Positions 26,322 through 59,200 of a stretch of DNA of 64,000 bases are shown here, piece after piece. Position 1 is the stretch's first letter, and each line of letters opens with the position of its first letter. The stretch lies in sequence record OR620964.1. One strand, given 5' to 3'. Below the pieces are notes generated by a model, which worked only from the letters and a program-made list of their open reading frames with translations, made no database searches and was not told where the DNA came from. A program made the position numbers and the translations under genes.

Positions 26322-28634
26322 CTATATGGTTTTGACACTAAGCGTAGACACGCCATTCTGTTTTGTTACTAACCACTGCTTATCAGAGAAGTGCTCAACA
26401 GCTAATGGTGTAATCCAGTATATGTTGGGTACAGTCTGCTTTAACAATGGTAGATAGTTTTCTATCAGATGATCTTTCATTGCATCACTACACCCTTGAT
26501 CAGGCTCATCAAGGATGATGAAGTCTGTTCTGCGATCAGCTGGGATAAATGGTATTATAGCAAACGCATACAACAAGCGGAAACAACTGGATTCAGATCC
26601 ACTCATGATACTAATGTCAGTTGTTGACTTAGACGTCAGGCGGGTTATTGTGGCTGTAACACCTTGTGCGCTAGTGCCAAGAGTAAAATGCATAGGCTCG
26701 GCAAACACACGACCACTATTCTCATTCAGCCTGTTCTCAATTAACTTGAGGCGTGATTCAAGTGCCTTAAGTTTTAACGCATTGTTACTATACGCCTTGT
26801 AAAGAATCTCAAATATTTGACGACTCTCAATCAGCGGAGCTAGCTTACTAAGTTTTGCATCTAGCTCTGATATGGTTGAAGCATAGTGATCAAACTCTTG
26901 GCAACGGGACTGTAACTTCTGTGCCTTAGTATCAGTATCAGATATTTCAATAGCAAGGTCTTTAATCTCTTTATCAAGATCCTTATACTTTTTGTTTAGT
27001 TGCTTGTGCGACATCGAAGGCTTTTTAAACGCTTTCAATGTTTGATTCAGTTCTTGCAGTTCCTCCAACTCACCTATTCTGGCTTTAGTCTTCTTACGAC
27101 TACGCTTAGGCTGTTCAACCTTCTTAGGCTTCTTAAGGGATTCAAGTTTTGCACTTAGCTTATCATACTTCTTAGCTTGCTCGAACTCTTTAGTCAGGCG
27201 ATCAATTTTCTTACCCAAGGCAGAAAGTTCTGTCTTTAGTTCCTTACGACTACGCTTAGGCTGCTTAACAGGTGACTTAAGCAAATCATTAAGGTACTTG
27301 TTAGACGTAAGCCATTCAATATCCTTTGTCGCCTGATCAATCGTAGCAGAAGCACCTTGCGCCGCACGTTTCATACTCTTCATATCAACGTCTTGGCTGC
27401 AAGTAGGGCACGTAGTTCCATCAACATGCTTTACGAGTTTTTCGTAGGCACTAACAATGGCTTTAGATTGCGCTCTGATGTCGGCAGCTTCCTCAATAGT
27501 TCGTTTAGGACTTTTTGACTTAGATAGCTTTGATTTGAGGTGTTTGATTTGTTCTTGGTATTCGGCATATAGGTCTTCCTGTTCTTCCAGCGCTTCTAAT
27601 TCTGCCTCAAGTTCCTCTTCTTCTTTGACGAGCTTTGAGTGCCGCTTGACAAGTTTCTTTGTATCAACATCACCAGACGATGATAACTCAGCCAGTTCTT
27701 TTTCCCAGCGTTTCTTTTGCTCGGAATACTCTTGGCTATCAGCTTCATACTCAGCAAAGTCTGCATGTTGCTGTAGCTCTTTACGCAGAGTCTTTAACTC
27801 GGACTTGATATCTTTTGATACAACACCAAGCTCGGCAATCAACTGCAATGTTTGCTCATACTGCTTGGCTTCGTTACGCAATGTGCTTACAGTAACAAAC
27901 TGCTCATACAATTCATTACGCAATGCCTTACGTGTATCAGATAGCTCGATCAGTTTCTTTAGATTCTTTCTGTCTCCCTTGGTTACACCTAATGCTTTTT
28001 GTTTACGCTGTGTAACATCAAGAATATCAGCCAGTCCCTTAGATTCTGTTTCAGCATCTTTGGCTGCATCAAGGTTCTGTTTCACCTTGGCTCTGATCAA
28101 ATCAAACTCATCCAACTTAAAGAAGTCAGACATATACTTTAAGCGTTCCGCAGGTCGAGCACGTTGGAACGGATGAGGTATCTGGCTCTGTAGGTAGCAG
28201 TAGCTATAGAACTCATCGGCAGATAGTGGAAAGTGTTTCTTGATCCAGCTTCGAGCAACGTCTTGACGCTCTATCTTTTGATCTTCTCCGTTATAGGACA
28301 CTTTATACTTGCTAGCCGTTTGCTGTACTTTTATGATCCCACCTTGAGGCGATCGCCACTCAAGTGATATCTCACTTCCCTTAGCAAGCATATTAGTCTT
28401 TGCTTTCTTGGCAAGTGCGAGAGGATCTGCTTCAAACAATAAGTTTGGGATAGTACCGAACATCATACTCTTGCCAGCGCCGTTGCTGTTCTTCTTAACA
28501 TCGAGGCTGTCATTATTAAGACCGCTTACCGTTACAAATCCCTGCTCATCAAGGTCGGTAAGTTCAAGGTCTTTATATACTCCAACATTTTTCAATTGGA
28601 TTGATTTGAGGCTGATGCCTGAATGTTCTGTCAC
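26322..28634 (-). CDS. sbcC: SbcC/Rad50/gp46-like SMC-type ATPase
   Basis: Walker A NGAGKS, coiled coil with CPTC zinc hook, signature MSGSE, Walker B FIILDEPD. Confidence 0.92.
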   Translation of the reverse strand: MTEHSGISLKSIQLKNVGVYKDLELTDLDEQGFVTVSGLNNDSLDVKKNSNGAGKSMMFGTIPNLLFEADPLALAKKAKTNMLAKGSEISLEWRSPQGGIIKVQQTASKYKVSYNGEDQKIERQDVARSWIKKHFPLSADEFYSYCYLQSQIPHPFQRARPAERLKYMSDFFKLDEFDLIRAKVKQNLDAAKDAETESKGLADILDVTQRKQKALGVTKGDRKNLKKLIELSDTRKALRNELYEQFVTVSTLRNEAKQYEQTLQLIAELGVVSKDIKSELKTLRKELQQHADFAEYEADSQEYSEQKKRWEKELAELSSSGDVDTKKLVKRHSKLVKEEEELEAELEALEEQEDLYAEYQEQIKHLKSKLSKSKSPKRTIEEAADIRAQSKAIVSAYEKLVKHVDGTTCPTCSQDVDMKSMKRAAQGASATIDQATKDIEWLTSNKYLNDLLKSPVKQPKRSRKELKTELSALGKKIDRLTKEFEQAKKYDKLSAKLESLKKPKKVEQPKRSRKKTKARIGELEELQELNQTLKAFKKPSMSHKQLNKKYKDLDKEIKDLAIEISDTDTKAQKLQSRCQEFDHYASTISELDAKLSKLAPLIESRQIFEILYKAYSNNALKLKALESRLKLIENRLNENSGRVFAEPMHFTLGTSAQGVTATITRLTSKSTTDISIMSGSESSCFRLLYAFAIIPFIPADRRTDFIILDEPDQGCSDAMKDHLIENYLPLLKQTVPNIYWITPLAVEHFSDKQWLVTKQNGVSTLSVKTI

Positions 28635-30359: not shown

Positions 30360-31649
30360 TTATTTCTTCTTTTTCTTCTTAGGTGTATCGCTCTCAATAG
30401 GTGATACTGAAATATCAATCTTGCCTGCATAGATATCAGCCATCAGTTTACAGATGGAAGTTTCCAACATGATATCAGGCGGCACACTTGAACTGTTGAA
30501 CGCTACTTCACAATCATTCAATACCGACTGCAAGTTGATTAGCTTAGGCAGGTTAACATCAACATCTTTATTCAGACGTGCCAGATTCAGGAACATCTTA
30601 AGGCCAGCAGACTGCCACTTATTGGTCTGAGTAAGGTGGCCAATGATACTATGGATAGTCCAACGTGCTTTCTGCATGATGCCTCTTGGGTCACCAGCTT
30701 CACGCAAGAACTGAATGACTGATAACAGATCCATTGAGAGAAACGCGCCAATCATTTGCACTGCCTTCTCTTCTAATTGAACTTCTGGATCAGCGGCAGC
30801 AATCGTCATAATAAGAGAAGAGTCGAATGTCTCACCTCCTAGTACCGCACTATACACGTTCTGCAATGTACCGATTGCACCACGCATCTGGCCACCAGCA
30901 AGATTAGCAATTTGTTTGATTGCTTTCTCTGAGGCATTACGTGCTTTCTCTTTCTTCACAGAAGGTAGGATTGATTCTGCTTCTGCTATCTGAGTCAAGC
31001 GTTTAGCAATCACATCTGCCTCAATCGGCATGATGTTAAGTCTGGTACAACGTCCAACCAGAGGTGATTTCAATTTCTCTGGGTTAGTCGTTATGAGAAT
31101 CCATACAACATGCGCAGGTGGCTCTTCCGTAGTTACCAGTAACTTGGATTCGGCTGCACTTGACATAAGATGCACTTCGTCCAATAGATAAACACGGCGC
31201 TTGAACATAGGACTAAGTAAGGAGCTATCAATGATGGCTTGTGTTCCATCAACCTTACCATGAACGTCTCCCATATCACGCTGCATAATATCTGGATGTG
31301 CATCCGGGCCTGAATCAGCCATCTGACAGGAGCGACATTTCCCACAAGCACTGAACGTATCGCAGTTGATATACTTTGCCAGCATACGTGCGAACGTCGT
31401 CTTACCTGCACCTGTGTGACCGCTAATCAGAATAGTGGAAGGGACGATTCCACTCTTTTGCCAGCCTTTAAATATCTTCGCAATGTGATCTTGACCAACA
31501 TAGTCTTCGATACGACGCGGTCTATACTTTGCAGGAAAGTTAACAGTCTGTAGTTCTACGTAGTCACTACCTTTCTTAGACTTCTTTGTACTTGGTTCAG
31601 AAGAATCGGTAAACGCACGTTTCTTCTTTTTCTTCTTCTCATCTGCCAT
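30360..31649 (-). CDS. dnaX: Clamp-loader AAA+ subunit, DNA polymerase III gamma/tau (DnaX) type
   Basis: KYRP...YVGQ, Walker A GHTGAGKTT, zinc module C..CGKCRSC, Walker B LLDEVH, GRC arginine finger; start refined to 31649 (GGAG RBS). Confidence 0.92.
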   Translation of the reverse strand: MADEKKKKKKRAFTDSSEPSTKKSKKGSDYVELQTVNFPAKYRPRRIEDYVGQDHIAKIFKGWQKSGIVPSTILISGHTGAGKTTFARMLAKYINCDTFSACGKCRSCQMADSGPDAHPDIMQRDMGDVHGKVDGTQAIIDSSLLSPMFKRRVYLLDEVHLMSSAAESKLLVTTEEPPAHVVWILITTNPEKLKSPLVGRCTRLNIMPIEADVIAKRLTQIAEAESILPSVKKEKARNASEKAIKQIANLAGGQMRGAIGTLQNVYSAVLGGETFDSSLIMTIAAADPEVQLEEKAVQMIGAFLSMDLLSVIQFLREAGDPRGIMQKARWTIHSIIGHLTQTNKWQSAGLKMFLNLARLNKDVDVNLPKLINLQSVLNDCEVAFNSSSVPPDIMLETSICKLMADIYAGKIDISVSPIESDTPKKKKKK

Positions 31650-31688
31650 GTTAACTCCAAACAATATTTATCGTGTGTTCCTATTGCT

Positions 31689-37597: not shown

Positions 37598-39193
37598 TTA
37601 CTCCGGGAATATTTCTTTTTCAGAAAACTTCTTAGCAACGAACACAGCATCTGGGCTATGTAACTCGTCACCGTCTAATAACAATAGTGCTCCATCATGC
37701 TCAAGGGAATAAACACCCTTAACATTCGGGCAGTTTAAAATCGCATCGAATAAAAACTTACTCTCCCAACCTGCTAGCATATGGTTGAGTATTCGCCTAC
37801 TGATCTTTTTACGCTTCTCACTAAGATTAGGATCGTAGCTAGAACCAGTGGCACACGTTAGCACACCATACTCGGCACGATTAGAATTTATGTTCTTGCG
37901 GAACTTAGAATGGTATACGCGCAGCAATTCGTTAATGCCGTAGAACAAAGGTGTTACGCGTGTATTCCAATCAATAATTCTATTTTTAATCGTGTGCTTT
38001 GGATAGTGCTTTAGGAATTCCTTATAGGCATTTCCATACGGGCTTGCTTCTAGTTGTCCAGCCGAGAAGATCGTTGAATATAAAAGTACCTTAGCAGATG
38101 ATTTAGGTAATTCAAATATTCGAGCAACGTCCTCAACAGAGGCAAACGTATCAAAGAATTTAAGATCAATATTGTTTAGTTCAAACTCTTTTCGCAATAC
38201 GTTGAACTGGCTTGACTGCATATCCCAATTCGTACCTACCGTATAGCAAACTTGCTTTAATGCTGAGGGTAGGTTCTGGAATCCACCGCCTATCTCAAAC
38301 AATCTACCACCAAGTCTGGACAATCTATATCTAGGCCAGTATCTTATGACCAGAGGACTTGTGCTAACAATTTGTACAGGGCCAGCGACTAACGTATCAA
38401 GTAGCGTCTTGACCTGCAGGTATTGTTTCTTAGCACGATGATTGGCAATCAACGACCTATCTTCCAAGTAAGCAAGTATAGGTTCTATGTTCACTTCATT
38501 TGGTAATAGCTTATTAAGGATTTTTGTGTAGTTTCGTCTAGCCTCCCTATCCCTACTTCGATGCAGTGATTTTAAATCATGCGTAGGTCGGTTAAAAGGT
38601 AGTTTAGAATTCTTTTCAATTTGAGACCACACCGTTATACCATAATCGTCTCTTAATATCTTTAACGGACTATAGAATCGTATACGGTGTAGAATATCCT
38701 CCGACGTGTGAGGTTTAATATGACCATACATGCCGTCTAAGACTTCTTGCCTGAGCCTAAACTCACGACTCTTTCCCTTAGCCTTATTGTATGGCTTGGT
38801 TTCTATTATATTGTCTTTCAGCCACTCTAGAGACCGACTAAATGTTCCCTCACTCTTAGAATATTTACCTACGGCAGTTGATTTACGTGCACCTAGATGC
38901 CCAAACACCATAGGAAGTTTATCGTGACCCAATTCACTAGAAAAAGGTACCCAAACACGTCCAAACTTCTTTTTCTTATCTTTTCTTGCAGGATAAAGAC
39001 TGCATTGTAGAATATGCCAGAAGAACAGGTTGAGTTGTGCGCGGAATTCACGTAGATCCGACGCTGACCCATTGTACGGACACGCATTTATAACATTATC
39101 GCGCACCCAAATAACGACCTCTTTCTCCTGGTAGGATGGGCTAGTGATTAATACAGCCCCTTGCCCGGAAACGATTCGTTTTTTCATATACAC
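37598..39193 (-). CDS. PolA-superfamily polymerase-like protein (TV-Pol-like), no exonuclease domain
   Basis: GGRLF..GGGFQNLP, motif A NWDMQSSQ, motif B AKVLLYSTIF, GWES, motif C LEHDG in the correct order. Confidence 0.6.
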   Translation of the reverse strand: MYMKKRIVSGQGAVLITSPSYQEKEVVIWVRDNVINACPYNGSASDLREFRAQLNLFFWHILQCSLYPARKDKKKKFGRVWVPFSSELGHDKLPMVFGHLGARKSTAVGKYSKSEGTFSRSLEWLKDNIIETKPYNKAKGKSREFRLRQEVLDGMYGHIKPHTSEDILHRIRFYSPLKILRDDYGITVWSQIEKNSKLPFNRPTHDLKSLHRSRDREARRNYTKILNKLLPNEVNIEPILAYLEDRSLIANHRAKKQYLQVKTLLDTLVAGPVQIVSTSPLVIRYWPRYRLSRLGGRLFEIGGGFQNLPSALKQVCYTVGTNWDMQSSQFNVLRKEFELNNIDLKFFDTFASVEDVARIFELPKSSAKVLLYSTIFSAGQLEASPYGNAYKEFLKHYPKHTIKNRIIDWNTRVTPLFYGINELLRVYHSKFRKNINSNRAEYGVLTCATGSSYDPNLSEKRKKISRRILNHMLAGWESKFLFDAILNCPNVKGVYSLEHDGALLLLDGDELHSPDAVFVAKKFSEKEIFPE

Positions 39194-39220
39194 ATCATGT
39201 TTACCTGAATTCCTATCGTA

Positions 39221-39229
39221 TCTTTACAG
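39221..39229 (-). promoter_or_regulatory. Putative phage promoter motif variant CTGTAAAGA
   Basis: 28 nt upstream of the polymerase-like ORF. Confidence 0.5.
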
Positions 39230-39672
39230 AATTTTAGACAAAACTTAGATCCGGCTGATCTTTTGACTCAAACAGCTTTTTTCTTCTTTCGATCCAAAAA
39301 TACATAGCTACACATCTTAAACAACATAGCTTGATCATAGCTACATAGAGATATACAGCTACGGCATACAACGCTACATACATGCTCATTGAACGCTGGC
39401 ATTGATATAACGCAGGTACATCTTTAGGCATTAAATAAATTTTAAGGGAGAATCGCGGGATTAGGGTACCTAGGCAGCCTATAGCAGCCAATACATAGCT
39501 CATGGCGCAAAACAGCCGGAAAATTTAGGTCGACTAAACCGTGCAAATAATTTTTTAAAAACACCCTTTTTTCCGAAATCCACCTGATTTTTAGGATTGA
39601 AAAACGCTGAATTCTCTAAAACCATGAAAAAACAGCGGTTTAACGCACTTTTACGAGGGTATAATTTTTGTG

Positions 39673-40272
39673 TTATTTTTTCCTTTTCACACGATTCGCC
39701 AATTTCTTTCCAATTTGTCTAAAAATACGCTCTACAGTTTCGCTATCATGCGATTGCATTGCATTCATTAGCTGTTCACCTTGGGCAGAACTTAGCTCAG
39801 GCATCACCATTTTAAGCATTTGTGACCGTGCTTTAGCAGCTGGGCTCTTAGAACGTGAAACAGAGCACTGTTCACCATGATTCTGTCGTTCTACTAACAG
39901 AACCCGTCGCTTATCTCCGAATATCTCATTGAATATGTCGCCAAATATATCTTTTAGATGGTTTTGGTGCTCAGGACTGCATTTTACGAATTTGCTGACG
40001 CTATCATGAGTGAAAGGATCTGACCCCTCTGCGGAGCCGTCTACGGCCTGTGTGGCTGTCTCCCTGACCAGATCCTCCGGCAAGGATTTGAACCCTTTCT
40101 TCGCAGGACGCTTCGCCGGAACATACGATCCGTTGTCCTCAAACGGAACCTTACCTGTTAACTCATTGGGCTTTGTTTCATCCAAAGGTGGCATATCTTG
40201 ACGGGCATCATCCGTTGTCCGTGTGAAGCGCCGCGTAATAAGGCCGTCATTTAAGCTGATTGATATCTTCAT
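39673..40272 (-). CDS. Hypothetical protein, 199 aa, with MKISISLN tag
   Basis: GGGG RBS; charged low-complexity sequence. Confidence 0.8.
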   Translation of the reverse strand: MKISISLNDGLITRRFTRTTDDARQDMPPLDETKPNELTGKVPFEDNGSYVPAKRPAKKGFKSLPEDLVRETATQAVDGSAEGSDPFTHDSVSKFVKCSPEHQNHLKDIFGDIFNEIFGDKRRVLLVERQNHGEQCSVSRSKSPAAKARSQMLKMVMPELSSAQGEQLMNAMQSHDSETVERIFRQIGKKLANRVKRKK

Positions 40273-40280
40273 TAAAACCC

Positions 40281-41384
40281 CTATTTGATTGCATAGCCTT
40301 TGCCAATATTGTACTGTGGCTCTTTACGTTGAACAGCACGGGTAGTAACAACCCATTCCCAACTTTGATTCTTAGCAGTACGCTTTTTAGGCGCCTCTGT
40401 TACTTTAAGCACATACTTCTTAAACGGAATGATCAACAAGTCTTCTGGCTCTATCATTCCGGTACGCGCAGGTAGAACAACTGTGATATTACCGACAGTA
40501 AGTTCCTGATCGTAGTTTAATGTATTGGCCTCTTCACTTATGTTGCCGTTTGTGATAGCCACACCTAAATCGAATACCATTACGCAGTGGGTGAATTGCT
40601 CAATATCCTTAATACGAATAGTAATATGCTTACCGCGATGCTGATCCAATAATTCTTTTGTCAGTTCTGTCTCAGTTCCATTGATGACAGCAATTGGCTT
40701 TGGATAGGCTGGCATTATATTCTCATTCAGGCGAATACTATATTCAGCCTTTTGGAAATATTTAGGAATCAACTGATCGAAATCAACATAGCCACCTTTA
40801 TCCTGCTGTTCAAATAGCAGTGGTGCGGCTGCACGATTCATGTGGTATCCCACCAGCGCCTTAACGTGATGGTGTGTCATGACGTTATAGATAAAGCCTG
40901 TTGCTTGGAACCCAGGTTGAATGCCCTGACGATAACAGATACCACAGTTAACTACGTTACCACCATCATAGCGAACATCCGTATTTTCACCATCTGTCAT
41001 CAAGTCTGCTGCATCAAGCAAGACACGCTCACCCTCTGTCATATCATCAAGAGATATGATTTGGTGCGCACCACCAAACATTGTACGACCAGATGTATTA
41101 AGAGTTACACCTGCTGATTGTGGATCGTGGTCTGTGCTTAAACTTTTACCTGCACCTGTTTCAATATCAAGTGCATCGTTGGCAACTACGTTACAGCTAC
41201 ATGTCAGACCAAACTTGGCTTTCTTGTATATGATAACCTGAGTGCTGTCTACGGCAAGTGCCTGTTCCACCTTAGACTGCACGACTTCAATAACACTATC
41301 CAATCTTTTTTGGACACGGTCATGTTCATATGTTTTATGACGACTATAGGTGTTACGGGGTTTCCCGTTATTAAGCCAGCTCAT
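40281..41384 (-). CDS. Hypothetical protein, 367 aa, probably virion structural, with CxC and CxxC motifs
   Basis: GGAG RBS; LTCSC and CGICY; a head-closure role is speculative. Confidence 0.8.
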   Translation of the reverse strand: MSWLNNGKPRNTYSRHKTYEHDRVQKRLDSVIEVVQSKVEQALAVDSTQVIIYKKAKFGLTCSCNVVANDALDIETGAGKSLSTDHDPQSAGVTLNTSGRTMFGGAHQIISLDDMTEGERVLLDAADLMTDGENTDVRYDGGNVVNCGICYRQGIQPGFQATGFIYNVMTHHHVKALVGYHMNRAAAPLLFEQQDKGGYVDFDQLIPKYFQKAEYSIRLNENIMPAYPKPIAVINGTETELTKELLDQHRGKHITIRIKDIEQFTHCVMVFDLGVAITNGNISEEANTLNYDQELTVGNITVVLPARTGMIEPEDLLIIPFKKYVLKVTEAPKKRTAKNQSWEWVVTTRAVQRKEPQYNIGKGYAIK

Positions 41385-42118: not shown

Positions 42119-42754
42119 ATGGTCGCTAAGAAAAAGAAACTCATTCCTATAAAAACAGTCACGGTCCTAGAGGCAGATAAAGGGCCAGTGGCTACATGTC
42201 CTGAAATGGAAGAACAGAACTTCCAATTTCATTTTCGTGGTAAGTGTCCTATGGTACGCTGCCAATATTGTACTACTGTTACACCTAATGGTTGCATGGC
42301 ACTAGACAGAAAAGAAAGTGCCGAGCGTACAATCAGCAACAAGGAGATTTATCATTACAAGAAAGGCTTGTTCCCTGAACTCGAAGACAGCGACCAAAAG
42401 CAACTGGACGCTCTCGTCCGTAAGTCACAAACTCGTGCCCGTGTTGCTATCTGCCTTGATATGTTTATCCATTCCCTTGATGGTTCTAATGTTGATAAGT
42501 CATTTCAATATATTCCCCATCGGCATACAACGGTAGACCATGTTCATGAGTACCTGATACAGACATTCCCTGCGTACTTACCTTGGATGCTTGTTCACTT
42601 ATCTGATGTTGATAAGTTCAATGAGGTTGTAAGTCAAGTAACGCAATCAGAACTTAACCTAGGTACAGCACTTAAATTAACGCCTAAGAAGTATCAGACG
42701 TTTTGCCAAGCGCTGCGCCAGATGAAAGACTCTTCTGGAGAAACCAATGAGTGA
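42119..42754 (+). CDS. Hypothetical protein, 211 aa, with Lys run and Cys cluster
   Basis: MVAKKKK; CP...CPMVRCQYC...GC. Confidence 0.8.
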   Translation: MVAKKKKLIPIKTVTVLEADKGPVATCPEMEEQNFQFHFRGKCPMVRCQYCTTVTPNGCMALDRKESAERTISNKEIYHYKKGLFPELEDSDQKQLDALVRKSQTRARVAICLDMFIHSLDGSNVDKSFQYIPHRHTTVDHVHEYLIQTFPAYLPWMLVHLSDVDKFNEVVSQVTQSELNLGTALKLTPKKYQTFCQALRQMKDSSGETNE

Positions 42755-44486
42755 ACTTACATTCGAACAGTACAAGATGCTGCTCACGCGTAACGTTCTG
42801 ACTGACGCATCTTTAATGGTGCGTAATAGTAGTCAGCCACGCGGTGACCTAGCATTTGAAGTGCTGGGCGACAACTTTAAAATGAAGCAGATCATTCTGC
42901 CTGGTCAACCTGCTATTCATGACTTGACCTATTTTGCTCCACTGCAAAACCTGCTAGCATCAAGCGCATTGAAAAAGCTGGTCGATACACACCAGCTTGT
43001 TATTCTCAATCCAGATGATCTGCCTGATGTAACTATACCTCTGCCAGAAACAACAATCACAGCCGCTCATGCAGGTGATGTTGTTATTGCTGGTCGTACT
43101 GCTCCTAACGCTACTGTAGTTATCATGCAGGGTGAAAATTCATGGACTGGTGTGTCTGGCGTTGGTGGTACATTCAGTATCCCTGTGTCAGGTTTGGTCG
43201 AAGGACAAGTAACACTGTTTGTGTCTGCTACTGGTTACGTTAGTGAGACATTCCAGTTTACTATTGCTGCTAAAATTGATTCTGATTATCCAGTACCTAC
43301 TGTTACCAAGGCCGAATATCTTGGTACAGAGATCACAGGCCAAACTGTTCCGAATGCTACTATTGCACTTGGTCAAGATACTACTGATGCAAATGAAGAT
43401 GGTGAGTTTACTCTTGCCTTGTCTACGCCTCTGGGTCTGACAGAAGTCAATCTGACTTTCTCTGCTGCTGGCTACAAGCCTTACGGTATGTTGATTACTC
43501 CATCAACAATTCCAATGAATGTTAGTCTGGATGAAGTTGCGTTCTTTGCAACTACTGTATCTGGTACTGCCGTCGCTGGTGCTGTGGTTAATATTCAGAT
43601 CACAGGGCAGACCGATGTTGCTGCCGAAGTAGATGTCACTGGTAACTATACTGCTACTGTTCTTCCTATTAAGGGAACTGTTACAGTCACTGCTACTGCC
43701 GCCGGTTATCAGAATGATAGCGCAGTCGGTACTCCTGCCAAGTTAGTTCTTGGCGCAATCACAGTTAATCCAGTTACACAGGGCAATACTTCTGTTTCTG
43801 GATCTGTTGCAGGCGTCAATGCTAATGCCGATGATTTGACTGTTCAAGTTATCACCCCGAGCAATGAAGTTACTGGTAACGTTGTTACTGGCAACTTTAA
43901 CGTTAGTGGTGTTAATACTTCCGTCGCTGGCTCAGCTAGTGTCACAGTCAAATCGGCATACTATGCAGATAAGACTCAGGCTTTCACCATTGTAGCGCTT
44001 CAAGAAATCCCTGATCCTACAGTAGAACCATTAGTTGAAGGTGCTGTATTAGTTTCGGGAACCACTATTGCGAATGCTAATATTACGTTAACGCAGAATG
44101 TTACTACTGCGACTGGCCTGTCAAATGGCGTAGGTGCTTTTGATATTGATATTGCTGCACTCTCTGCTGGTGAGTTAGAGATTGAAATCGCAGCACCTGG
44201 TTATATCACAGAAGTGTTTGCGGTTAATGTTTCTCAATTACCTACTGTGCCTGCACCAACTATCACACAAGTGACAGCGGGTGACGAGTCCGTCAGTGGT
44301 ACTACGGTAGCTAATGCTACAGTGACTGTAGAACAGGGCGCTATTACTGGATCTGTTGTTGCTGGGCCAGACGGCTTGTTCACAGTACCTATTAGTGGCC
44401 CGATTGCCTTAGGTGATTATACAGTTAGTTTGACTGCACCTAACTATCGTCCAGCTACACATACATTCCAAGCAATCCCTGCTTAA
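42747..44486 (+). CDS. Virion-associated protein: N-terminal module plus six tandem Ig-like repeats
   Basis: Six ~80-aa beta-rich repeats with G-T-x-x-N-A-T-V and A-x-G-Y motifs; GGAG RBS. Confidence 0.8.
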   Translation: MSELTFEQYKMLLTRNVLTDASLMVRNSSQPRGDLAFEVLGDNFKMKQIILPGQPAIHDLTYFAPLQNLLASSALKKLVDTHQLVILNPDDLPDVTIPLPETTITAAHAGDVVIAGRTAPNATVVIMQGENSWTGVSGVGGTFSIPVSGLVEGQVTLFVSATGYVSETFQFTIAAKIDSDYPVPTVTKAEYLGTEITGQTVPNATIALGQDTTDANEDGEFTLALSTPLGLTEVNLTFSAAGYKPYGMLITPSTIPMNVSLDEVAFFATTVSGTAVAGAVVNIQITGQTDVAAEVDVTGNYTATVLPIKGTVTVTATAAGYQNDSAVGTPAKLVLGAITVNPVTQGNTSVSGSVAGVNANADDLTVQVITPSNEVTGNVVTGNFNVSGVNTSVAGSASVTVKSAYYADKTQAFTIVALQEIPDPTVEPLVEGAVLVSGTTIANANITLTQNVTTATGLSNGVGAFDIDIAALSAGELEIEIAAPGYITEVFAVNVSQLPTVPAPTITQVTAGDESVSGTTVANATVTVEQGAITGSVVAGPDGLFTVPISGPIALGDYTVSLTAPNYRPATHTFQAIPA

Positions 44487-45248: not shown

Positions 45249-46313
45249 TTATTTTCTCTTCTGTTGCGTTACCTTTTCTATACGATTCCATCCTAACTTC
45301 TTTGCAGGAATAAGACATTTACTTCCGTGCTTATCCTTTAGTGCCAGACGTACTTCTTTAATTATTTCTTTAGGTGCGTTATCCGGGTCCATCTTTACTA
45401 ACTTGCCTCTATCATCTTTCTCTCTAGGCAGTTTAAAATGTAGAACGCGAATATGACCATTAGATGCACCAAACGAAGCAGTGATATTATTACGAAGTAG
45501 TTTACCACCACCATCATTGTCTGTCATTGTATAGACTGTATGCACACCTAGAAGCTCTATCGATCGTCGCTTAACATCACCGAACTGCTCGGCTCCCAGG
45601 ACAGCAAGTGCTGGTATTCCTTGCGAGATAAGAGCGAGTGCATCACGCGGACCTTCAACAATAACAACATAGTTGAGTGCATACTTTCGAAGTAAGTCTT
45701 TTACTAGCTGTAGTGGAAACAGACCTTTCTCTTTGGCCCAATCACCTTGTGAGTTAACATAACTCGTACCAGTAAACTGTTTTGATAAGTATGCAGCAAT
45801 ACCACCTACATACTTTGTACCACTCTTGCAAGGGAAGAAGCAAATGTTTGTGCCTGTTCGCTGTGCGTTTAGAAGACCACCGGCCGCACGAACAAGAGAG
45901 CCAGGATAACCACGCCAGTCAACATCATCAGGCCATTCCATATAGCTTGGTCTACCTAGTGCTTTCATCAATGATACTAACGATGGATATGTACCAATCT
46001 TTGTACCCATCTTATCATAGATGGTGCGCAATGCTGATAGTGAGTTCTCACCAGCATCTTTCAAGCGCCACTCTTTGATTTCTGCTAGCCCTACTTTTCT
46101 GGCCAACACATTCCAATGGCCTTTCTCTCCGCAGCCGAAGCAATGGAAGCTGCCAAGAGGTATTTCCATACCTACCGCAGTATAGATACCACAGCTAGGA
46201 CTTCCATCTGCATGGAAAGGACAACACACCATAACAGAGTCACCCGCAAACTTCTTATCGCCTTCTATCTTTCCTATCTCATCCATTATGAGTTGGTGAA
46301 CATCTTCTGCCAT
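45249..46313 (-). CDS. dnaG: DnaG-type DNA primase (zinc finger plus TOPRIM)
   Basis: CCPFH...FHCFGC zinc finger; VVIVEGPRDALAL; MTDNDGGG. Confidence 0.9.
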   Translation of the reverse strand: MAEDVHQLIMDEIGKIEGDKKFAGDSVMVCCPFHADGSPSCGIYTAVGMEIPLGSFHCFGCGEKGHWNVLARKVGLAEIKEWRLKDAGENSLSALRTIYDKMGTKIGTYPSLVSLMKALGRPSYMEWPDDVDWRGYPGSLVRAAGGLLNAQRTGTNICFFPCKSGTKYVGGIAAYLSKQFTGTSYVNSQGDWAKEKGLFPLQLVKDLLRKYALNYVVIVEGPRDALALISQGIPALAVLGAEQFGDVKRRSIELLGVHTVYTMTDNDGGGKLLRNNITASFGASNGHIRVLHFKLPREKDDRGKLVKMDPDNAPKEIIKEVRLALKDKHGSKCLIPAKKLGWNRIEKVTQQKRK

Positions 46314-46384: not shown

Positions 46385-46705
46385 ATGAAACAGCGCTATG
46401 TAGAAAAAGCTATTCGTCAATTCTATGCACCCCATTGGTTGCGACTGAGTGATGAATTAGGCGTAGACCCAAGAACCTGTGGCCACTTCAATCGTCAAGG
46501 CGATATGATTGGTCTGAATATAACGACAAGCACAGAACTACCTGTGGTATTAAAGCTCGCCCATCTGGAGCTTATTAGGACTGTAAATGAAGGAGAGGAA
46601 GGTGAGATTCCCGTAGTTCGTACTACTTATAAATTTGGTGCTCACTTTTATGAATTCATTTACTTCGCGAACAATATTGCGATAGGCGAGAAGACCAGTG
46701 AGTAG
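46385..46705 (+). CDS. Hypothetical protein, 106 aa
   Basis: GGAG RBS. Confidence 0.75.
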   Translation: MKQRYVEKAIRQFYAPHWLRLSDELGVDPRTCGHFNRQGDMIGLNITTSTELPVVLKLAHLELIRTVNEGEEGEIPVVRTTYKFGAHFYEFIYFANNIAIGEKTSE

Positions 46706-47774
46706 ATCCTTTGATTCAATACCGCCGGCGTTCAAACGAGACTTATCGCGTATTGGGCGTCTGATAGATGCGGCTCTTGATGTATCAGTTCAAGAAAAGC
46801 GTTATCCAAAGAAGCGTGTTAGCCCGTCTATGTTTCCTATCTGTAGTGTGCAAGAGTACGCCAAGCAGATATACCAGAAGCATCGTGGTTACATGACAGG
46901 CTCGGCAGGTACCATGCTGAATATATTTGCTAAAGCAGGTACTGGTATGCATGAGTCTGTGCAGAACGCGCTAGGTCATAGTGGTCAGATGGTTGGCCAC
47001 TGGAAGTGTACCAATCGTGATTGTCCTAAACACGCTTTAACTAAAGATGTTTGGGCTAACGGTAAGCGCGTAAAGAGAGGAAAGTTCACACGGACGTTCA
47101 GCACAGACAACATGTGCCCAAGCTGCAAGAAGCCTATGGCGTATAGTGAGCTTAAGGTTCTATACAAAACGTTAAAGGGATATGTCGATGGATTGATAGA
47201 TAACCTTGATGGCACCTATAGCCTGATAGATTTAAAATCAACAACTATCACTAAGGGCGAAGACGGTACCTTCTTTGTTAAGTATCACCGTTTCCAGATT
47301 GCTACGTATGCGTACCTGTTGAAGAAACGATATGGGTTTAACATTGTAGATTATACTCTTGTCTATGTACCTAGAGACAACCCGAAGAAGTTTGTTGAAA
47401 AGTCTTTTCGTTTTGATGATCAAGAATCAAAGGCAGCATTTGACTTTATGAAAGTTCAGATCGATGCTTGGGATGCAGTTCTTGATGCGACTAAAAAGAA
47501 AGACCCGCACATCGCTATGGCGAAAAAGCCGTGCAAGAACGAGGACTATTACTGGAATGAGTTTCATGGCTACGATACGTGCCCGTTTGTCGATCATTGT
47601 TTTATTGATACACGGCTCACTGAATTTCTTGAACAAATGGAACAGCGGATACTTGCTAATCCTGAGTTCACGTATGCCGAAGTAGTTAAGCCTGTTAGGG
47701 AAAAGAAACAACAAGGCTTAATGCCCAGTAAGAAACCTCAGAAGCACAAGTCAGTCAAACAATTCCAGCTTTGA
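46698..47774 (+). CDS. Cas4/AddB-like PD-(D/E)XK exonuclease with Fe-S cysteines and an inserted zinc ribbon
   Basis: SPSMFPIC, GTGMH, KGYVDGL...IDLKS, QIATYAY, C-terminal PC...TCPFVDHC; insert CTNRDC...CPSC. Confidence 0.8.
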   Translation: MSRSFDSIPPAFKRDLSRIGRLIDAALDVSVQEKRYPKKRVSPSMFPICSVQEYAKQIYQKHRGYMTGSAGTMLNIFAKAGTGMHESVQNALGHSGQMVGHWKCTNRDCPKHALTKDVWANGKRVKRGKFTRTFSTDNMCPSCKKPMAYSELKVLYKTLKGYVDGLIDNLDGTYSLIDLKSTTITKGEDGTFFVKYHRFQIATYAYLLKKRYGFNIVDYTLVYVPRDNPKKFVEKSFRFDDQESKAAFDFMKVQIDAWDAVLDATKKKDPHIAMAKKPCKNEDYYWNEFHGYDTCPFVDHCFIDTRLTEFLEQMEQRILANPEFTYAEVVKPVREKKQQGLMPSKKPQKHKSVKQFQL

Positions 47775-56204: not shown

Positions 56205-59200
56205 ATGGCAAAAGCAAAGAAAGAAAAGAAAAGCAAAGCTACAGAGCTTGCTGACGTTGGTATTGTTGCAGCCCTAGCATTCGATATGAGTGCTATGATG
56301 GATGAACAACTTGACCAGATCGAAAAGAAAACAAAAATCAGTAGCCAGAGCATGATGCGTCATGCTGAGCGTGTGTCTACTGGTGCCCTTGCTCTTGATA
56401 TGTATTTGGATGGCGGTATTGTACCAGGCGGCTGGTATACTTTCAGCGGCGGTGAGCAATCTTGTAAGTCAACCATGACAATGAGTATCATGGCTACGCT
56501 TATCAAACTTGCATACTCTGGTATTGCCGCTGTGTTTGACTTTGAAGGCTCGACTGATGCCGATTACGTAGCTGGCCAGTTGAAGACTCACGGCGTAACT
56601 GTTGATCCTAAGACCATATTTGGTGTTAAGGATGATGAGACAGGTGAATGGCTAATCAAGCCTCGTATTCGTTACTACTCTCCAGATAACGGTGAGAAAT
56701 TCTTTGACTACATGAGCATGTTGCGTATCCGCCTGCCTGAGAAAGTTGTAGAGAAAGACGGTTCCGCTTATCTGCTATTTGAGAACACTAACGATAACCG
56801 CAAGAAAGTTGGCGATAAGTACGATAAGAAATGGTTCAGCAAGCACAACCAGTTTAAGGTTCCTGCTGCTGATGGTCATATGCAAGCAATTGCTCTTGTC
56901 GATTCCTATCCAGCAATGTTGCCCGATGCTCTGGATGATGACGATGCTTCTAAAGCAATGGCGATTCAAGCTCGTATGTTCTCTGATGGTATCAAGCGTA
57001 TTCGTGGTGGCATGCGTCGTAAGATGATTACGATTGTTGGTGTTAACCAATTACGCCAGAAGCCTGCTACTATGTTCGGCTGCTTGCATGGATCTACGCA
57101 GGTACAGTTCGTTGACGGTCGTGTCCATACCATGAAAGACATAGTTGATCAACGCATTGAAGGTCAAGTGTGGTCTATCAATGAAGAGACACGCGCTATT
57201 GAAGCACGTTCAATCATTGATTGGCATTACAATGGTGATGTTGAGCATAAAGACCATTGGATGAAGATCGTTACTCGCTGCCCTGAGACAGGCAACGGTC
57301 AAGCCTTCGTTATCTGTACTCCTAACCATGAAGTCCTGACAGACAGTGGTTGGAAACGCGCAGACGAGGTTACGTTAACTGATCGCATGGTATCTAAGTT
57401 CACTTCTGTTCGTCGTGGTACTGTTTCGCAATTCCTAAATGCCATGGCTGTTGGTGATAGTTCGATTGTATCGGATAGCCCGAATAGCGGTCTGATGAAA
57501 TTGCAGGATAACCTAAACCCTGACTACGTGCAGTGGAAGATGGATAAGCTCGAACCATTCTTTACGTTTGATTCTTACTCTGCTTCGCATAACGGTGAGT
57601 GTTATATTGCTCGTGGCAGCGACTTCGTTGCGTACTCTAAACATGTGCCTGAACGTGAGCCATGGAAAGTTAAGTTTGATGATATGTCGTTTGCTGTGTT
57701 CTACATGGACGACGGTACATTACACGCAGGCTCTTCGGCCAGATTTAGTGTTAAGCGATTCAAGGGTAACGCCAAAGCACTAGCTAAAATAGCTCAGATG
57801 TGGCAGGAACATGGATTTACCGTGAATCATAGCCACGACGATGGTTGTTTCTGGCTGACGAAAGAAGATAGTATTGAGTTCTTCGAGCGCATTCGCAAGT
57901 ACGTGCCTGACTGTATGCAGTATAAACTACCTACTGAGCATCAAGGCTTCTACAAAGAGTTTGAACTGACAGGCGAAGAACACCAACGTCCTGTATATGT
58001 CGAAGTGATTCGTACTGAAAATGGTAGCGACCGTGCTTTCCGAATGAAAGGTAAGTATGATATCTCGGTTGAGCATAATCATAACTACATGGTTGGCAAT
58101 AGTAAGAACGGAATCGTGGTACATAACAGTCCCGAATACGAGCCATGTGGGGACGCCTTGAAGTTCTACTGTTTTGCGGAAGATACTCTCATTCGCACAG
58201 ACTGTGGCCTGATGACTGCGCCTCAGATGATGAACGTAATCGATCAAGGTGGTAGTTTTGAGATCGAGACGTTGAATGGATTCAGCCCTGCTGCCAAAGT
58301 CTGGCGTGTTGAAGATGCACCGTATCCAATTCTTATTGATGCATCTGGTCATACATATACAGGCAGTGCGCAACATCGCCAGCTTGTGTTTGTTGCAGAT
58401 ACAACGGATAAGAATGAAAGCGTAATGCGCACAGAGTGGCTAACGCTTGAGAAAATGGCTACAGAAGATCGTCCGTACTTCGCTGCAATGCGTTTCGCTT
58501 CTCTGGAAGAACTGCAACAAAATTGCCCAGATGATTATGATGAAGCCCGTGCTCTGATCCTTTCACTGCTTCTGAGTGTTGCACAAATATCGACTCGGTC
58601 TATCTCTATCGGAACAACTCTTGATGGGCGTGTTCTGGAAGAGAAAGGTACTGTTGTTTCTTTCCGTGACGTTAGCACAAACCTTGTTGTACGTGCATTC
58701 TCTAACATCGGCATCATCGCACTGGCACAAGAAGAGAGTGTATTAATTCCTGCGCTAGACGCGACTGAGTTAGGTACGATTGTATCAAACGGTATCACTC
58801 CTGAACAAAGTTCAATGCAGCGTAGTCTAATGATGCAATTGGCTATTATGGATTCTATGCCTGAGTTGGCTCGATTCATTACTGACTTCAATCAGAACAT
58901 ATTCCCTAATGCGCCTGTGTATCTTGATGATAACGAGCGTCTGGCATTTGTGCTTGATGAAATTCGTATGCATGAATATGTGTTTAACGAATATGCAGCG
59001 GCGTATGATGCGATCCAGTTCCAGTTGGCTTATGTAGAAGATTTCTATCAGTTCTGTGGTAACATGGTTCCTGTATCGTGCTCTCTGCGTGTACTGGAGA
59101 AACCTACTGTCTTCTATGATGTGAACGTACCAGAGACAAGTGTTGTTATCACTAATGGCTTTGTTTCGCATAACAGTGATGTTCGTGTTCGTCTGGCTTC

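What the first reader, a model, noticed from the sequence alone, without database searches (positions are those of the whole stretch)
37598..39193. Unrecognised PolA-superfamily polymerase (TV-Pol-like)
Seen, in order: GGRLF..GGGFQNLP (compare PolA TGRLSS..NLQNIP), motif A Asp in NWDMQSSQ, O-helix K-x3-Y in AKVLLYSTIF, GWES, and motif C HDG. The N-terminal part is basic and wHTH-like, and no proofreading domain is evident. Established: Iyer, Abhiman and Aravind described TV-Pols, a divergent family related to PolA and T7 RNAP in phages and mobile elements, with an HD-type motif C and a proposed primase-like role; I know of no biochemical characterisation. Because a DnaG primase is also present, the role is open. 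Inference: origin-specific primer synthesis, a dedicated RNA polymerase or a repair polymerase.
Basis: partly seen in the sequence, partly recalled or inferred. Interest (0 to 1): 0.75.

Follow-up and report, generated by a model that had tools for sequence, protein, structure and literature searches.

The report
Divergent TV-Pol polymerase in jumbo phage
A gene annotated only as "hypothetical" in a 249-kb Yersinia phage encodes a second, very divergent DNA-polymerase-I-like enzyme of the little-studied TV-Pol family, with no proofreading domain; it probably helps start or restart phage DNA synthesis, but no close relative has been tested at the bench.

Summary
The key residues R297, D324, K368, E477, D500 and G501 are invariant across 35 relatives sharing as little as 18% identity.

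No Pfam, NCBIfam or PDB sequence search recognises the protein. A confident AlphaFold model does: its Foldseek matches are family A DNA polymerases first (Klenow, E=3.7e-6) and T7-like or mitochondrial RNA polymerases second.

A profile of the family matches Microcystis phage Ma-LMM01 gp030 (hhalign probability 98.9-99.3%, E=4e-17 to 2e-19), including the N-terminal domain. Ma-LMM01 is a TV-Pol carrier named by Iyer et al. 2008. The protein is therefore a TV-PolN + TV-Pol enzyme.

The phage also encodes a canonical proofreading PolA, a DnaG primase, a clamp loader and a sigma factor, so this is an accessory polymerase. Its locus is syntenic in 17 related jumbo-phage genomes. Relatives sit in integrase/AlpA islands of Enterobacterales chromosomes.

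Verdict: a new member of a known but uncurated kind. The most likely role is an exonuclease-free DNA primase-polymerase. That role is inferred, not shown.

The parts
37598..39193 (-). Whole gene fHeYen902_117c: 531 aa from GTG 39193; alternative ATG start at 39187; stop at 37598-37600.
   Evidence: Hits PHROG 30690 at E=2e-217. 24 orthologues are aligned.
38654..39163 (-). N-terminal TV-PolN-like domain (about residues 11-180). It is basic (pI 9.8) and mostly helical, with a helix/beta-hairpin/helix element at residues 119-155. Invariant residues include P39, H60, P83, G89, F97 and R120.
   Evidence: The domain is shared with Enterobacterales island proteins and with Ma-LMM01 gp030. A separate model has pLDDT 79. 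Foldseek gives no significant match; the top of the list is winged-helix proteins at E>1. pI.
38384..38653 (-). Helical region between the N-terminal domain and the palm (residues 181-270); presumed thumb.
   Evidence: Helices 183-196, 216-227, 237-247 and 252-269 in the model. The assignment as thumb is inferred from its position before the beta-hairpin; it was not checked by superposition.
38267..38311 (-). Beta-hairpin motif GGRLFEIGGGFQNLP with invariant R297. It is the counterpart of Klenow TGRLSSTDPNLQNIP (R668).
38201..38230 (-). Motif A, NWDMQSSQFN. D324 is the catalytic Asp (Klenow D705). Q329 occupies the sugar 'steric gate' position (Klenow E710, T7 RNAP G542).
   Evidence: D324 is invariant in 35 diverse relatives. 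Alignment. It lies in strand 321-325, followed by helix 328-339.
38060..38104 (-). Motif B / O-helix, KSSAKVLLYSTIFSA. K364-x3-K368 stands in for RxxxK. K368 = Klenow K758, Y372 = F762, F376 = Y766 (T7 RNAP Y639).
   Evidence: K368 is invariant. Aligned to T7 DNAP K522/Y526/Y530 and to Klenow.
37748..37798 (-). RRILNHMLAGWESKFLF, the counterpart of PolA R-x3-N-x-P-x-Q-G-x-A-A-D (Klenow N845...Q849-G850). H471, G475 and E477 are invariant among the orthologues.
37682..37708 (-). Motif C, SLEHDGALL. H499-D500 correspond to Klenow H881-D882. D500 sits at the turn of a beta-hairpin (strands 491-497 and 501-506).
   Evidence: D500 and G501 are invariant. Topology. Ma-LMM01 gp030 has the same HDGAL.
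39673..41384 (-). Two upstream genes of the same leftward gene string: 367 aa (40281-41384, PHROG 21298) and 199 aa (39673-40272, PHROG 31583). Both are syntenic with the polymerase in all 17 related phage loci. Function unknown.
   Evidence: A functional link to the polymerase is not shown.

Best explanation
The gene encodes an active, exonuclease-free nucleic-acid polymerase of the TV-Pol family, with architecture TV-PolN + TV-Pol. TV-Pols are the most divergent branch of the DNA polymerase I / T7 RNA polymerase superfamily.

Proposed mechanism:
- D324 (motif A) and D500 (motif C) hold the two catalytic metal ions on an RRM-like palm.
- R297, on the preceding beta-hairpin, contacts the primer-template.
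- K368 and Y372, on the O-helix, bind the incoming nucleotide.
- The basic N-terminal domain supplies extra DNA binding.

The phage already has a proofreading replicative PolA, a DnaG primase and a clamp loader, so this is an accessory enzyme. The most likely job is primase-polymerase work: starting short DNA strands de novo, or extending them, at replication origins or restart sites. This would be the job its relatives are inferred to do in the replication modules of integrative islands.

What is shown: the fold, the family, the conservation, the synteny and the absence of an exonuclease.
What is inferred: catalytic activity, dNTP preference, priming and the biological role.

Sub-confidences: TV-Pol family 0.9; active template-dependent polymerase 0.8; dNTP rather than NTP 0.6; primase role 0.4.
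For: Fold:
- The AlphaFold2 model has pLDDT 83.
- The 49 best Foldseek PDB matches are all family A DNA polymerases or T7/mitochondrial RNA polymerases. Klenow is first at E=3.7e-6; apicoplast Pol, Pol theta, Pol nu and Bst follow.
- In BFVD, after its own family, the matches are phage PolAs and polymerase-helicase proteins of a virophage (Zamilon 'DNA replication protein') and of algal/giant viruses.

Catalytic residues:
- R297, D324, K368, E477, D500 and G501 are the only invariant columns across 35 relatives. They align with Klenow R668, D705, K758 and D882.

TV-Pol membership:
- hhalign to Ma-LMM01 gp030 gives probability 98.85%, E=4e-17 from the N-terminal domain to motif B.
- The global comparison gives 99.3%, E=2e-19, including motif C.
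- gp030 lies next to an IS605 OrfB transposase, as described in PMC2579912.

Accessory status:
- gp066 is a 1059-aa PolA with a 3'-5' exonuclease domain.
- DnaG primase and clamp loader are present. Sigma factor and SSB are annotated.

Stable function in the phage:
- The locus is the same in 17 jumbo-phage loci, and the phage clade is monophyletic.

Replication context of relatives:
- Enterobacterales islands carry integrase-AlpA-(about 370-aa basic protein)-Pol-cargo.
- Vibrio jumbo phage GR7B carries ligase-Rep helicase-Pol-RNase HI.

Sugar choice:
- A bulky Gln sits at the steric-gate position, and Phe (not Tyr) sits at the T7 RNAP Y639 position.

Precedent: CcPol-MP is a PolA-fold DNA primase (PMC7581432).
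Against: - No activity has been measured for any TV-PolN-bearing protein.
- The phage already has a DnaG primase, so a second primase is not obviously needed.
- None of the genes examined around the phage copy is a recognisable helicase or SSB-like partner. The neighbours have no detectable domains.
- CcPol needs MP to prime. CcPol is also closer to canonical PolAs than this protein is (PMC10201439).
- The steric-gate residue is Gln, not the Glu of DNA-synthesising PolAs, so sugar selectivity is open.
- Profile-profile support for PolA itself is weak at sequence level: E of about 1e-4 to 1e-3 and low probability.
- No iterons or origin-like repeats were found next to the gene.
- The polymerase evolves faster (34-77% identity) than its neighbours.
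Confidence: 0.55

Rival explanations
1. It is a primer-dependent gap-filling, lesion-bypass or recombination-associated DNA polymerase, working like Pol theta/nu or a Pol I pol domain without proofreading. It does no priming. It would extend 3' ends made by the phage recombination machinery (RecA/UvsX, SbcCD, Holliday-junction resolvase, Cas4-like nuclease) encoded around it.
For: - There is no exonuclease domain.
- Pol theta and Pol nu are among the best structural matches.
- The gene lies in a recombination/repair-rich region: HJ resolvase is divergent from the operon; SbcC is at 26322-28634; a PD-(D/E)XK nuclease is at 46698-47774; RecA is at 56205-59708.
- DnaG already covers priming.
- CcPol alone only extends primers (PMC7581432).
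Against: - Relatives in islands sit where a replication-initiation module is expected, after integrase-AlpA. That is not a repair context.
- The conserved N-terminal DNA-binding-type domain has no counterpart in repair PolAs.
- Iyer et al. argue for primase-polymerase from repeated displacement of prim-pol domains (PMC2579912).
Confidence: 0.25
2. It uses ribonucleotides. It would be either an RNA primase or a small T7-like single-subunit RNA polymerase that transcribes a subset of phage genes from its own promoters, with the N-terminal winged-helix-like domain acting as the promoter reader.
For: - T7 RNAP and mitochondrial RNAP are significant structural matches (E=5.5e-4 and below).
- The steric-gate Glu of DNA-synthesising PolAs is replaced by Gln.
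- Iyer et al. propose an ancestral primase (RNA polymerase) activity for TV-Pols (PMC2579912).
- In the Vibrio phage, an RNase HI gene lies next to the homologue.
Against: - DNA polymerases outrank RNA polymerases in every structural list.
- Gln is as bulky as Glu, whereas T7 RNAP has Gly at this position.
- The residue at the T7 RNAP Y639 position is Phe (F376), which lacks the hydroxyl that selects ribose.
- hhalign against T7 RNAP finds nothing.
- The protein is 531 aa; T7 RNAP is 883 aa. No counterpart of T7 RNAP's specificity loop or N-terminal promoter-binding domain was identified.
- The phage encodes a sigma factor, so it is expected to use the host RNA polymerase (PMC7412058).
Confidence: 0.12
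3. It is a passenger: the remnant of a TV-Pol mobile element or satellite captured by an ancestor of this phage clade, with no role in phage growth. Alternatively, it has a role only in conflict with related islands in the host.
For: - TV-Pols are typically carried by transposons and integrative elements (PMC2579912).
- Related genes sit in islands of the very bacteria these phages infect, such as Erwinia amylovora and Pectobacterium.
- The gene evolves faster than its neighbours.
Against: - No integrase, resolvase or transposase lies next to the phage copy, and the locus is the same in 17 genomes.
- The phage clade is monophyletic and separate from the island clade.
- All catalytic residues are invariant over sequences only 35% identical. 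That indicates selection for activity.
Confidence: 0.06

Closest known systems
TV-Pol family with N-terminal TV-PolN domain (Iyer, Abhiman & Aravind 2008); example Microcystis phage Ma-LMM01 gp030
   Same: - The profile match covers both the N-terminal domain and the polymerase domain: probability 98.9-99.3%.
- It has the same minimal architecture: a beta-hairpin Arg, two catalytic Asp, a Lys-bearing O-helix and an HDG(A/L) motif C.
- It has no nuclease domain.
- It is unrecognised by Pfam.
   Different: - The Ma-LMM01 copy and most described TV-Pols ride in transposons or integrative elements, or are linked to D5-like helicases. This copy is a fixed, syntenic gene of a jumbo-phage clade with neither.
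- In the tree it falls in a 'GGR...EHDG' group, separate from the 'TGR...NEHDG' group that holds gp030.
- RxxxK is KxxxK here.
CcPol-MP primase-polymerase of staphylococcal SCCmec (Bebel et al. 2020; Rice 2023)
   Same: - It has a PolA-fold catalytic domain without a working proofreading exonuclease.
- It is encoded by a mobile genetic element.
- Iyer et al. listed it among the TV-Pols.
- It shows that a PolA fold can prime DNA synthesis de novo.
   Different: - CcPol is recognisably a canonical PolA, nearest the CHEAP subfamily (PMC10201439).
- It keeps part of the exonuclease domain and lacks TV-PolN.
- It keeps the steric-gate Glu.
- It needs the OB-fold partner MP, and it is followed by a helicase gene.
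- None of these features was found here.
Klenow-type family A DNA polymerases, including this phage's own replicative PolA gp066
   Same: - It has the same right-hand fold.
- The motifs are colinear: TGRLSS...NLQNIP, motif A Asp, motif B K-x3-[FY]-x3-[YF], Q-G motif and motif C HD.
   Different: - There is no Pfam DNA_pol_A hit even at E<=10, whereas gp066 scores 1.4e-52.
- It has no 3'-5' exonuclease.
- It has Gln rather than Glu at the steric gate, and Gly rather than Glu after the motif C Asp.
- It has an extra N-terminal domain of about 180 aa.
T7-like single-subunit RNA polymerases
   Same: - It belongs to the same superfamily.
- The structural match is significant.
- Motif C is of the 'HD' + small-residue type (T7: HDS).
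   Different: - It is much smaller.
- It has Phe where T7 RNAP has Y639, and bulky Gln where T7 RNAP has G542.
- There is no profile match.
- RNAP-specific promoter-recognition elements were not identified.

Membership tests
TV-Pol (Iyer et al. 2008) | Significant profile similarity to an accepted member, stronger than to classical PolA | tested here: met
   The family profile against Ma-LMM01 gp030 gives probability 98.85%, E=4e-17, and 99.3%, E=2.2e-19 in the global comparison. Against a 23-sequence PolA alignment it gives E=4e-4 to 4e-3. Caveat: that gp030 is the Ma-LMM01 TV-Pol of the paper is inferred from its motifs and the IS605 neighbour. The paper's gene list was not readable.
TV-Pol (Iyer et al. 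2008) | Beta-hairpin before the palm with an absolutely conserved Arg | tested here: met
   R297 is invariant in 35 relatives. Strands 289-291 and 298-300 flank it in the model.
TV-Pol (Iyer et al. 2008) | RRM-like palm with two conserved metal-binding Asp | tested here: met
   D324 and D500 are invariant. D324 lies in a strand that is followed by a helix, and D500 lies at a hairpin turn. The palm is matched by Foldseek. The Asp-Asp distance itself was not measurable, because no coordinates are returned.
TV-Pol (Iyer et al. 2008) | Fingers with an RxxxK motif | tested here: met
   K368 is invariant. Position -4 is K364 here and R or K in many relatives.
TV-Pol (Iyer et al. 2008) | Bi-helical coiled-coil thumb | tested here: inconclusive
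   Helices 216-269 precede the hairpin, but no superposition could be inspected.
TV-Pol (Iyer et al. 2008) | No fused or linked nuclease domain | tested here: met
   There is no exonuclease Pfam hit. The N-terminal domain has no nuclease fold match. The immediate neighbours examined have no nuclease hit.
TV-Pol (Iyer et al. 2008) | N-terminal TV-PolN domain (defines a subset of the family) | tested here: met
   The hhalign match to gp030 starts at residue 20 of the query and residue 24 of gp030. The domain also aligns with the island proteins.
TV-Pol (Iyer et al. 2008) | Neighbourhood with a D5-like helicase, or with an integrase, resolvase or transposase | tested here: not met
   It is not met for the phage copy. 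It is met for relatives: integrase and AlpA, resolvase, IS605 transposase. This is a contextual feature, not a structural one.
Classical family A DNA polymerase (Pfam PF00476) | Match to the curated DNA_pol_A model | tested here: not met
   There is no hit at E<=10 for this protein. None of 48 relatives hits at E<=0.01. The phage's gp066 scores 1.4e-52.
Classical family A DNA polymerase (Pfam PF00476) | Right-hand PolA fold with colinear motifs A, B and C | tested here: met
Classical family A DNA polymerase (Pfam PF00476) | Glu steric gate five residues after the motif A Asp | tested here: not met
   The residue is Q329, invariant in 24 orthologues.
T7-like single-subunit RNA polymerase | Tyr at the Y639 position; RNAP-specific N-terminal domain and specificity loop | tested here: not met
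   F376 is at the Y639/Y766 position. hhalign to T7 RNAP gives E=0.35. The structural match is weaker than to DNA polymerases. Absence of the specificity loop was not examined residue by residue.
PolA-SSB (CcPol-MP) primases | Adjacent small OB-fold partner and a helicase in the same operon | tested here: inconclusive
   The neighbours (89, 174, 199 and 367 aa) have no Pfam, PHROG-function or PDB sequence match. No Walker A motif was found.

The most novel reading that the evidence does not exclude
TV-PolN + TV-Pol is a self-contained, sequence-directed primase-polymerase. In this reading the N-terminal winged-helix-like domain replaces the SSB partner of CcPol, letting a minimal PolA fold start chains de novo at specific sites. 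The Gln steric gate may also let it use either sugar. Jumbo phages of this clade would use it to fire their origin independently of host RNA polymerase and DnaG. Satellite-like islands in the same hosts would carry a sister enzyme to replicate themselves. This would be the first biochemical look at the proposed ancestor-like state of both DNA polymerase I and T7 RNA polymerase.
Probability: 0.3. Interest if true: 0.75.

Novelty: new member of a known kind. Interest (0 to 1): 0.5.

Why it matters
TV-Pols were proposed in 2008, by computation alone, as the minimal, ancestor-like form of the DNA polymerase I / T7 RNA polymerase superfamily, with dual primase and polymerase activity. The one protein from that list that has been tested (CcPol) turned out to be close to ordinary PolAs and lacks the N-terminal domain.

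The protein here and its relatives are missed by Pfam and NCBIfam, carry no function in PHROGs, and did not surface in the 2023 PolA reclassification. They are labelled 'hypothetical' in nearly all of the 43 phage genomes (a divergent copy in pEa_SNUABM_5 is annotated 'putative helicase').

This copy comes from a cultured phage of an enterobacterial host, so the original primase-polymerase hypothesis is directly testable with it. The result would also say what a second polymerase does in jumbo-phage replication. It would improve the annotation of a recurrent gene in Enterobacterales islands that carry defence cargo.

Tried and rejected
Searches that found nothing:
- Pfam, NCBIfam and PDB sequence or profile searches of the protein and its relatives. 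One apparent set of Pfam hits (PriX, LEM and others) came from P0050, a repetitive false relative; it was discarded.
- hhalign of the family profile against single sequences. T7 DNAP matched only motif B (E=0.014). T7 RNAP matched nothing.
- A second word-index search with a diverse alignment reached no further than the first.
- The paper's supplement listing TV-Pol gene ids is not held as text.

A narrower island subfamily worked.

Inconclusive:
- The N-terminal domain was modelled alone and searched by fold. The best E was 1.1. The winged-helix proteins at the top are only a hint.

Ideas tested and rejected:
- The upstream 367-aa phage protein is not the counterpart of the roughly 380-aa island partner.
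- There are no origin-like iterons in 39150-39720, only short two-copy repeats. The stretch 39234-39625 is mostly two small annotated ORFs.
- The promoter and terminator scan gave fewer sites than shuffled sequence.
- The gene is not the phage's replicative polymerase. gp066 is a full PolA with an exonuclease domain.
Full report
**Where the window comes from.** The region is 100% identical to Yersinia phage fHe-Yen9-02 (OR620964.1, 248,678 bp). This is a jumbo myovirus isolated on Y. enterocolitica O:9; window position 1 is about record position 62,001. Its relatives are Erwinia phages Y3 and Alexandra and the pEa_SNUABM series, and Dickeya phages AD1 and JA11. The literature places these relatives in the 'Lupandier' group. 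That group has a UDG-exo-PolA replicase, a beta clamp, a clamp loader and its own sigma factor (PMC7412058).

**The observation.** On the plus strand the interval is full of stops. On the minus strand it is one ORF of 531 codons, 37598-39193, annotated as hypothetical protein fHeYen902_117c.
- GGRLFEIGGGFQNLP, residues 295-309
- NWDMQSSQFN, residues 322-331
- AKVLLYSTIF, residues 367-376
- GWES, residues 475-478
- HDG, residues 499-501

The gene is real and under selection. It matches PHROG 30690 ('unknown function') at E=2e-217. It has full-length homologues in 43 phage records. In 24 orthologues down to 35% identity the motif residues are invariant.

**Curated resources do not recognise it.**
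- Pfam gives nothing, even at E<=10.
- NCBIfam gives nothing for 35 relatives.
- PDB sequences give nothing by phmmer or by two family profiles.
- A scan of 1.84 billion cluster representatives found only 47 related clusters. None of them has a genuine Pfam domain.

Across 35 of these relatives, at 18-43% identity, the only invariant columns are R297, D324, K368, E477, D500 and G501. This is the pattern expected for a polymerase active site.

**The fold.** AlphaFold2 on the 24-sequence alignment gave mean pLDDT 83. In Foldseek against the PDB, the 49 best matches are all family A DNA polymerases or T7/mitochondrial RNA polymerases:
- Klenow, E=3.7e-6, probability 1.00
- apicoplast Pol, Pol theta, Bst, KlenTaq, Pol nu, DpoZ and T7 DNAP
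- T7 RNAP from E=5.5e-4, then mitochondrial RNAP

Against viral models, the matches after its own family are phage PolAs and polymerase-helicase proteins of Zamilon virophage, Pyramimonas orientalis virus and Catovirus.

In the model, D324 lies in a strand that is followed by a helix. D500 sits at the turn of a beta-hairpin.

**Residue correspondences.** I ran profile-profile alignment of the polymerase half against two PolA alignments. One held E. coli Klenow, T7 DNAP and the phage's own PolA. The other added 20 further jumbo-phage-type PolAs. The statistics are only marginal (E=1.8e-4 to 4e-3). The alignment is nevertheless colinear through every motif:

| This protein | Klenow | Other |
|---|---|---|
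| GGRLFE..GGGFQNLP | TGRLSSTDPNLQNIP | |
| D324 | D705 | |
| Q329 | E710 (steric gate) | T7 RNAP G542 |
| K368 / Y372 / F376 | K758 / F762 / Y766 | T7 DNAP K522 / Y526 / Y530 |
| RRILNHMLAGWES | R..INAPMQGTAAD | |
| EHDG | VHDE | |

**TV-Pol membership.**
- P0054, a relative found at E=1e-5, hits Microcystis phage Ma-LMM01 by tblastn.
- The ORF it hits, gp030 (506 aa), lies next to an IS605 OrfB/TnpB-type transposase.
- Iyer et al. 2008 name Ma-LMM01 as carrying a TV-Pol in an integrated element. They describe IS605-type transposases as typical neighbours, and they name an N-terminal domain, TV-PolN (PMC2579912).
- The family profile matches gp030 at probability 98.85%, E=4e-17, from the N-terminal domain through motif B.
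- The global comparison gives 99.3%, E=2.2e-19, and includes an identical HDGAL motif C.

I therefore file the protein as TV-PolN + TV-Pol. The caveat is that the paper's gene list could not be read to confirm the gp030 identifier.

**The N-terminal domain.** Residues about 11-180 are basic (pI 9.8). They are homologous between the phage and island versions; invariant residues include P39, H60, P83, G89, F97 and R120. A separate model (pLDDT 79) has no significant structural neighbour: the best E is 1.1. The list is dominated by winged-helix proteins such as MarR, PadR, BLM RQC and ORC/MCM WH. 'wHTH-like' is therefore a hint, not a finding. No nuclease fold appears.

**What else the phage has.**
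- A canonical replicative PolA, gp066: 1059 aa, DNA_pol_A at 1.4e-52 plus a 3'-5' exonuclease domain. It lies just left of the window.
- A DnaG primase (45249-46313, minus strand) and a clamp loader (30360-31664, minus strand).
- A sigma factor, an SSB and an intein-bearing RecA/UvsX.
- A 2458-aa SNF2-type helicase with an intein and LAGLIDADG domain.

The TV-Pol is thus an accessory polymerase. The phage is expected to transcribe with host RNA polymerase plus its own sigma factor.

**Genomic context.** In 17 related jumbo-phage loci the order is conserved: HJ resolvase (divergent), then 367-aa protein, 199-aa protein, Pol, and further on a peptidase. The polymerase is less conserved (34-77% identity) than the 367-aa protein (59-66%) or the resolvase (67-71%). 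No integrase or transposase flanks it. The neighbours have no recognisable domains. There are no iteron-like repeats upstream.

**Relatives elsewhere.**
- One subfamily sits in chromosomes of Klebsiella, Proteus, Morganella, Providencia, Erwinia amylovora, Pectobacterium, Budvicia and Gilliamella.
- There it forms a conserved module: DUF2787, RadC, integrase, a 232-aa protein, AlpA, a basic protein of about 370 aa, the Pol, and then cargo such as a type I restriction-modification system. This placement, after integrase and AlpA, is where I would expect the replication module of a satellite-like island (my inference).
- The partner of about 370 aa has no conserved Walker A motif. It is unrelated to the phage's 367-aa protein.
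- Another relative lies next to a resolvase, ArdC and RadC.
- Vibrio jumbo phage GR7B has a homologue between a Rep helicase gene and an RNase HI gene.
- In a maximum-likelihood tree the jumbo-phage clade is monophyletic (97-99% support). The island clade is separate (100%). Ma-LMM01 gp030 falls in a more distant group.

**Mechanism and role.**
- Shown: the fold, the family, invariant active-site residues, the lack of an exonuclease, accessory status and stable synteny.
- Inferred: two-metal catalysis by D324 and D500; template contact by R297; nucleotide binding by K368 and Y372; extra DNA binding by the N-terminal domain.
- Sugar choice is open. Gln329 is as bulky as the Glu that excludes ribose in PolAs, and F376 lacks the hydroxyl of T7 RNAP Y639. 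Both point to dNTPs, but neither is proof.
- The primase-polymerase role rests on three things: the island context, the argument of Iyer et al., and the precedent of CcPol-MP. CcPol-MP is a PolA-fold enzyme that primes with dNTPs when bound to an SSB-like partner (PMC7581432, PMC10061031).
- That precedent is loose. CcPol lacks TV-PolN and keeps the steric-gate Glu. It also sits next to canonical PolAs in the 2023 reclassification, where term searches found no mention of jumbo phages, Erwinia phages or Sputnik (PMC10201439).

**Rivals.** These are a primer-dependent repair or recombination polymerase, an NTP-using primase or RNA polymerase, and a passenger gene. They are weighed in their own sections.

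**Verdict.** This is a new, unannotated member of a known but experimentally almost untouched family. Its biological role is unproven.

Noticed in passing
window 56205-59708 (+): The 1167-aa RecA/UvsX-like recombinase is interrupted by an intein (Pfam RecA plus Intein_splicing). The record annotates it simply as 'UvsX-like recombinase'.
   Followed up: partly
window 1858-9234 (-): A 2458-aa ORF annotated 'DNA helicase' carries SNF2-related and Helicase_C domains, plus an intein splicing domain and a LAGLIDADG homing-endonuclease domain. About 1000 N-terminal residues have no match.
   Followed up: partly
L005 4802-11500; L014-L024 (Enterobacterales chromosomes): There is a recurrent island module: DUF2787, RadC, tyrosine integrase, AlpA, a basic protein of about 370 aa and unknown fold, and the TV-Pol, followed by variable cargo (type I RM, AAA_15 ATPase). 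It occurs in Erwinia amylovora and Pectobacterium, among others. E. amylovora is the host of most jumbo phages that carry the phage version.
   Followed up: partly
L045 4341-6197 (Vibrio phage vB_VcorM_GR7B, 208 kb): A 618-aa homologue of the same family sits between a Rep-type helicase gene and an RNase HI gene, close to ligase. The family is therefore not confined to the Erwinia/Dickeya/Yersinia jumbo-phage clade.
   Followed up: no
window 39187-39193 (-): The annotated start is GTG 39193, with AGGT nine bases upstream. Most orthologues begin at the Met two codons later (ATG 39187). The true start is uncertain by two residues.
   Followed up: yes
window 42747-44486 (+): A 579-aa protein with a bacterial Ig-like (Big_6) domain and a CarboxypepD_reg-like domain lies among replication and recombination genes. 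Its locus is conserved, but it is only 30-47% identical across the clade.
   Followed up: no
window 26322-28634 (-) and record 79270-80316: The phage carries an SbcC-like (PHROG 77) and an SbcD-like nuclease pair, but the two genes lie about 8 kb apart rather than adjacent. The SbcC-like gene is annotated 'hypothetical'.
   Followed up: no
P0136, P0139 (relatives of the phage's replicative PolA gp066): Some metagenomic relatives of the replicative PolA carry intein and LAGLIDADG domains inside the polymerase. This phage's own gp066 does not.
   Followed up: no
CP088398.1 25706-26422 (E. coli 377-kb 'plasmid') and Proteus mirabilis records NZ_OL790811/12: There are weak to moderate tblastn hits of the island-type TV-Pol in a very large E. 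coli plasmid record, and in 4-Mb Proteus records filed as plasmids. In the Proteus records the matching stretch has no listed gene.
   Followed up: no
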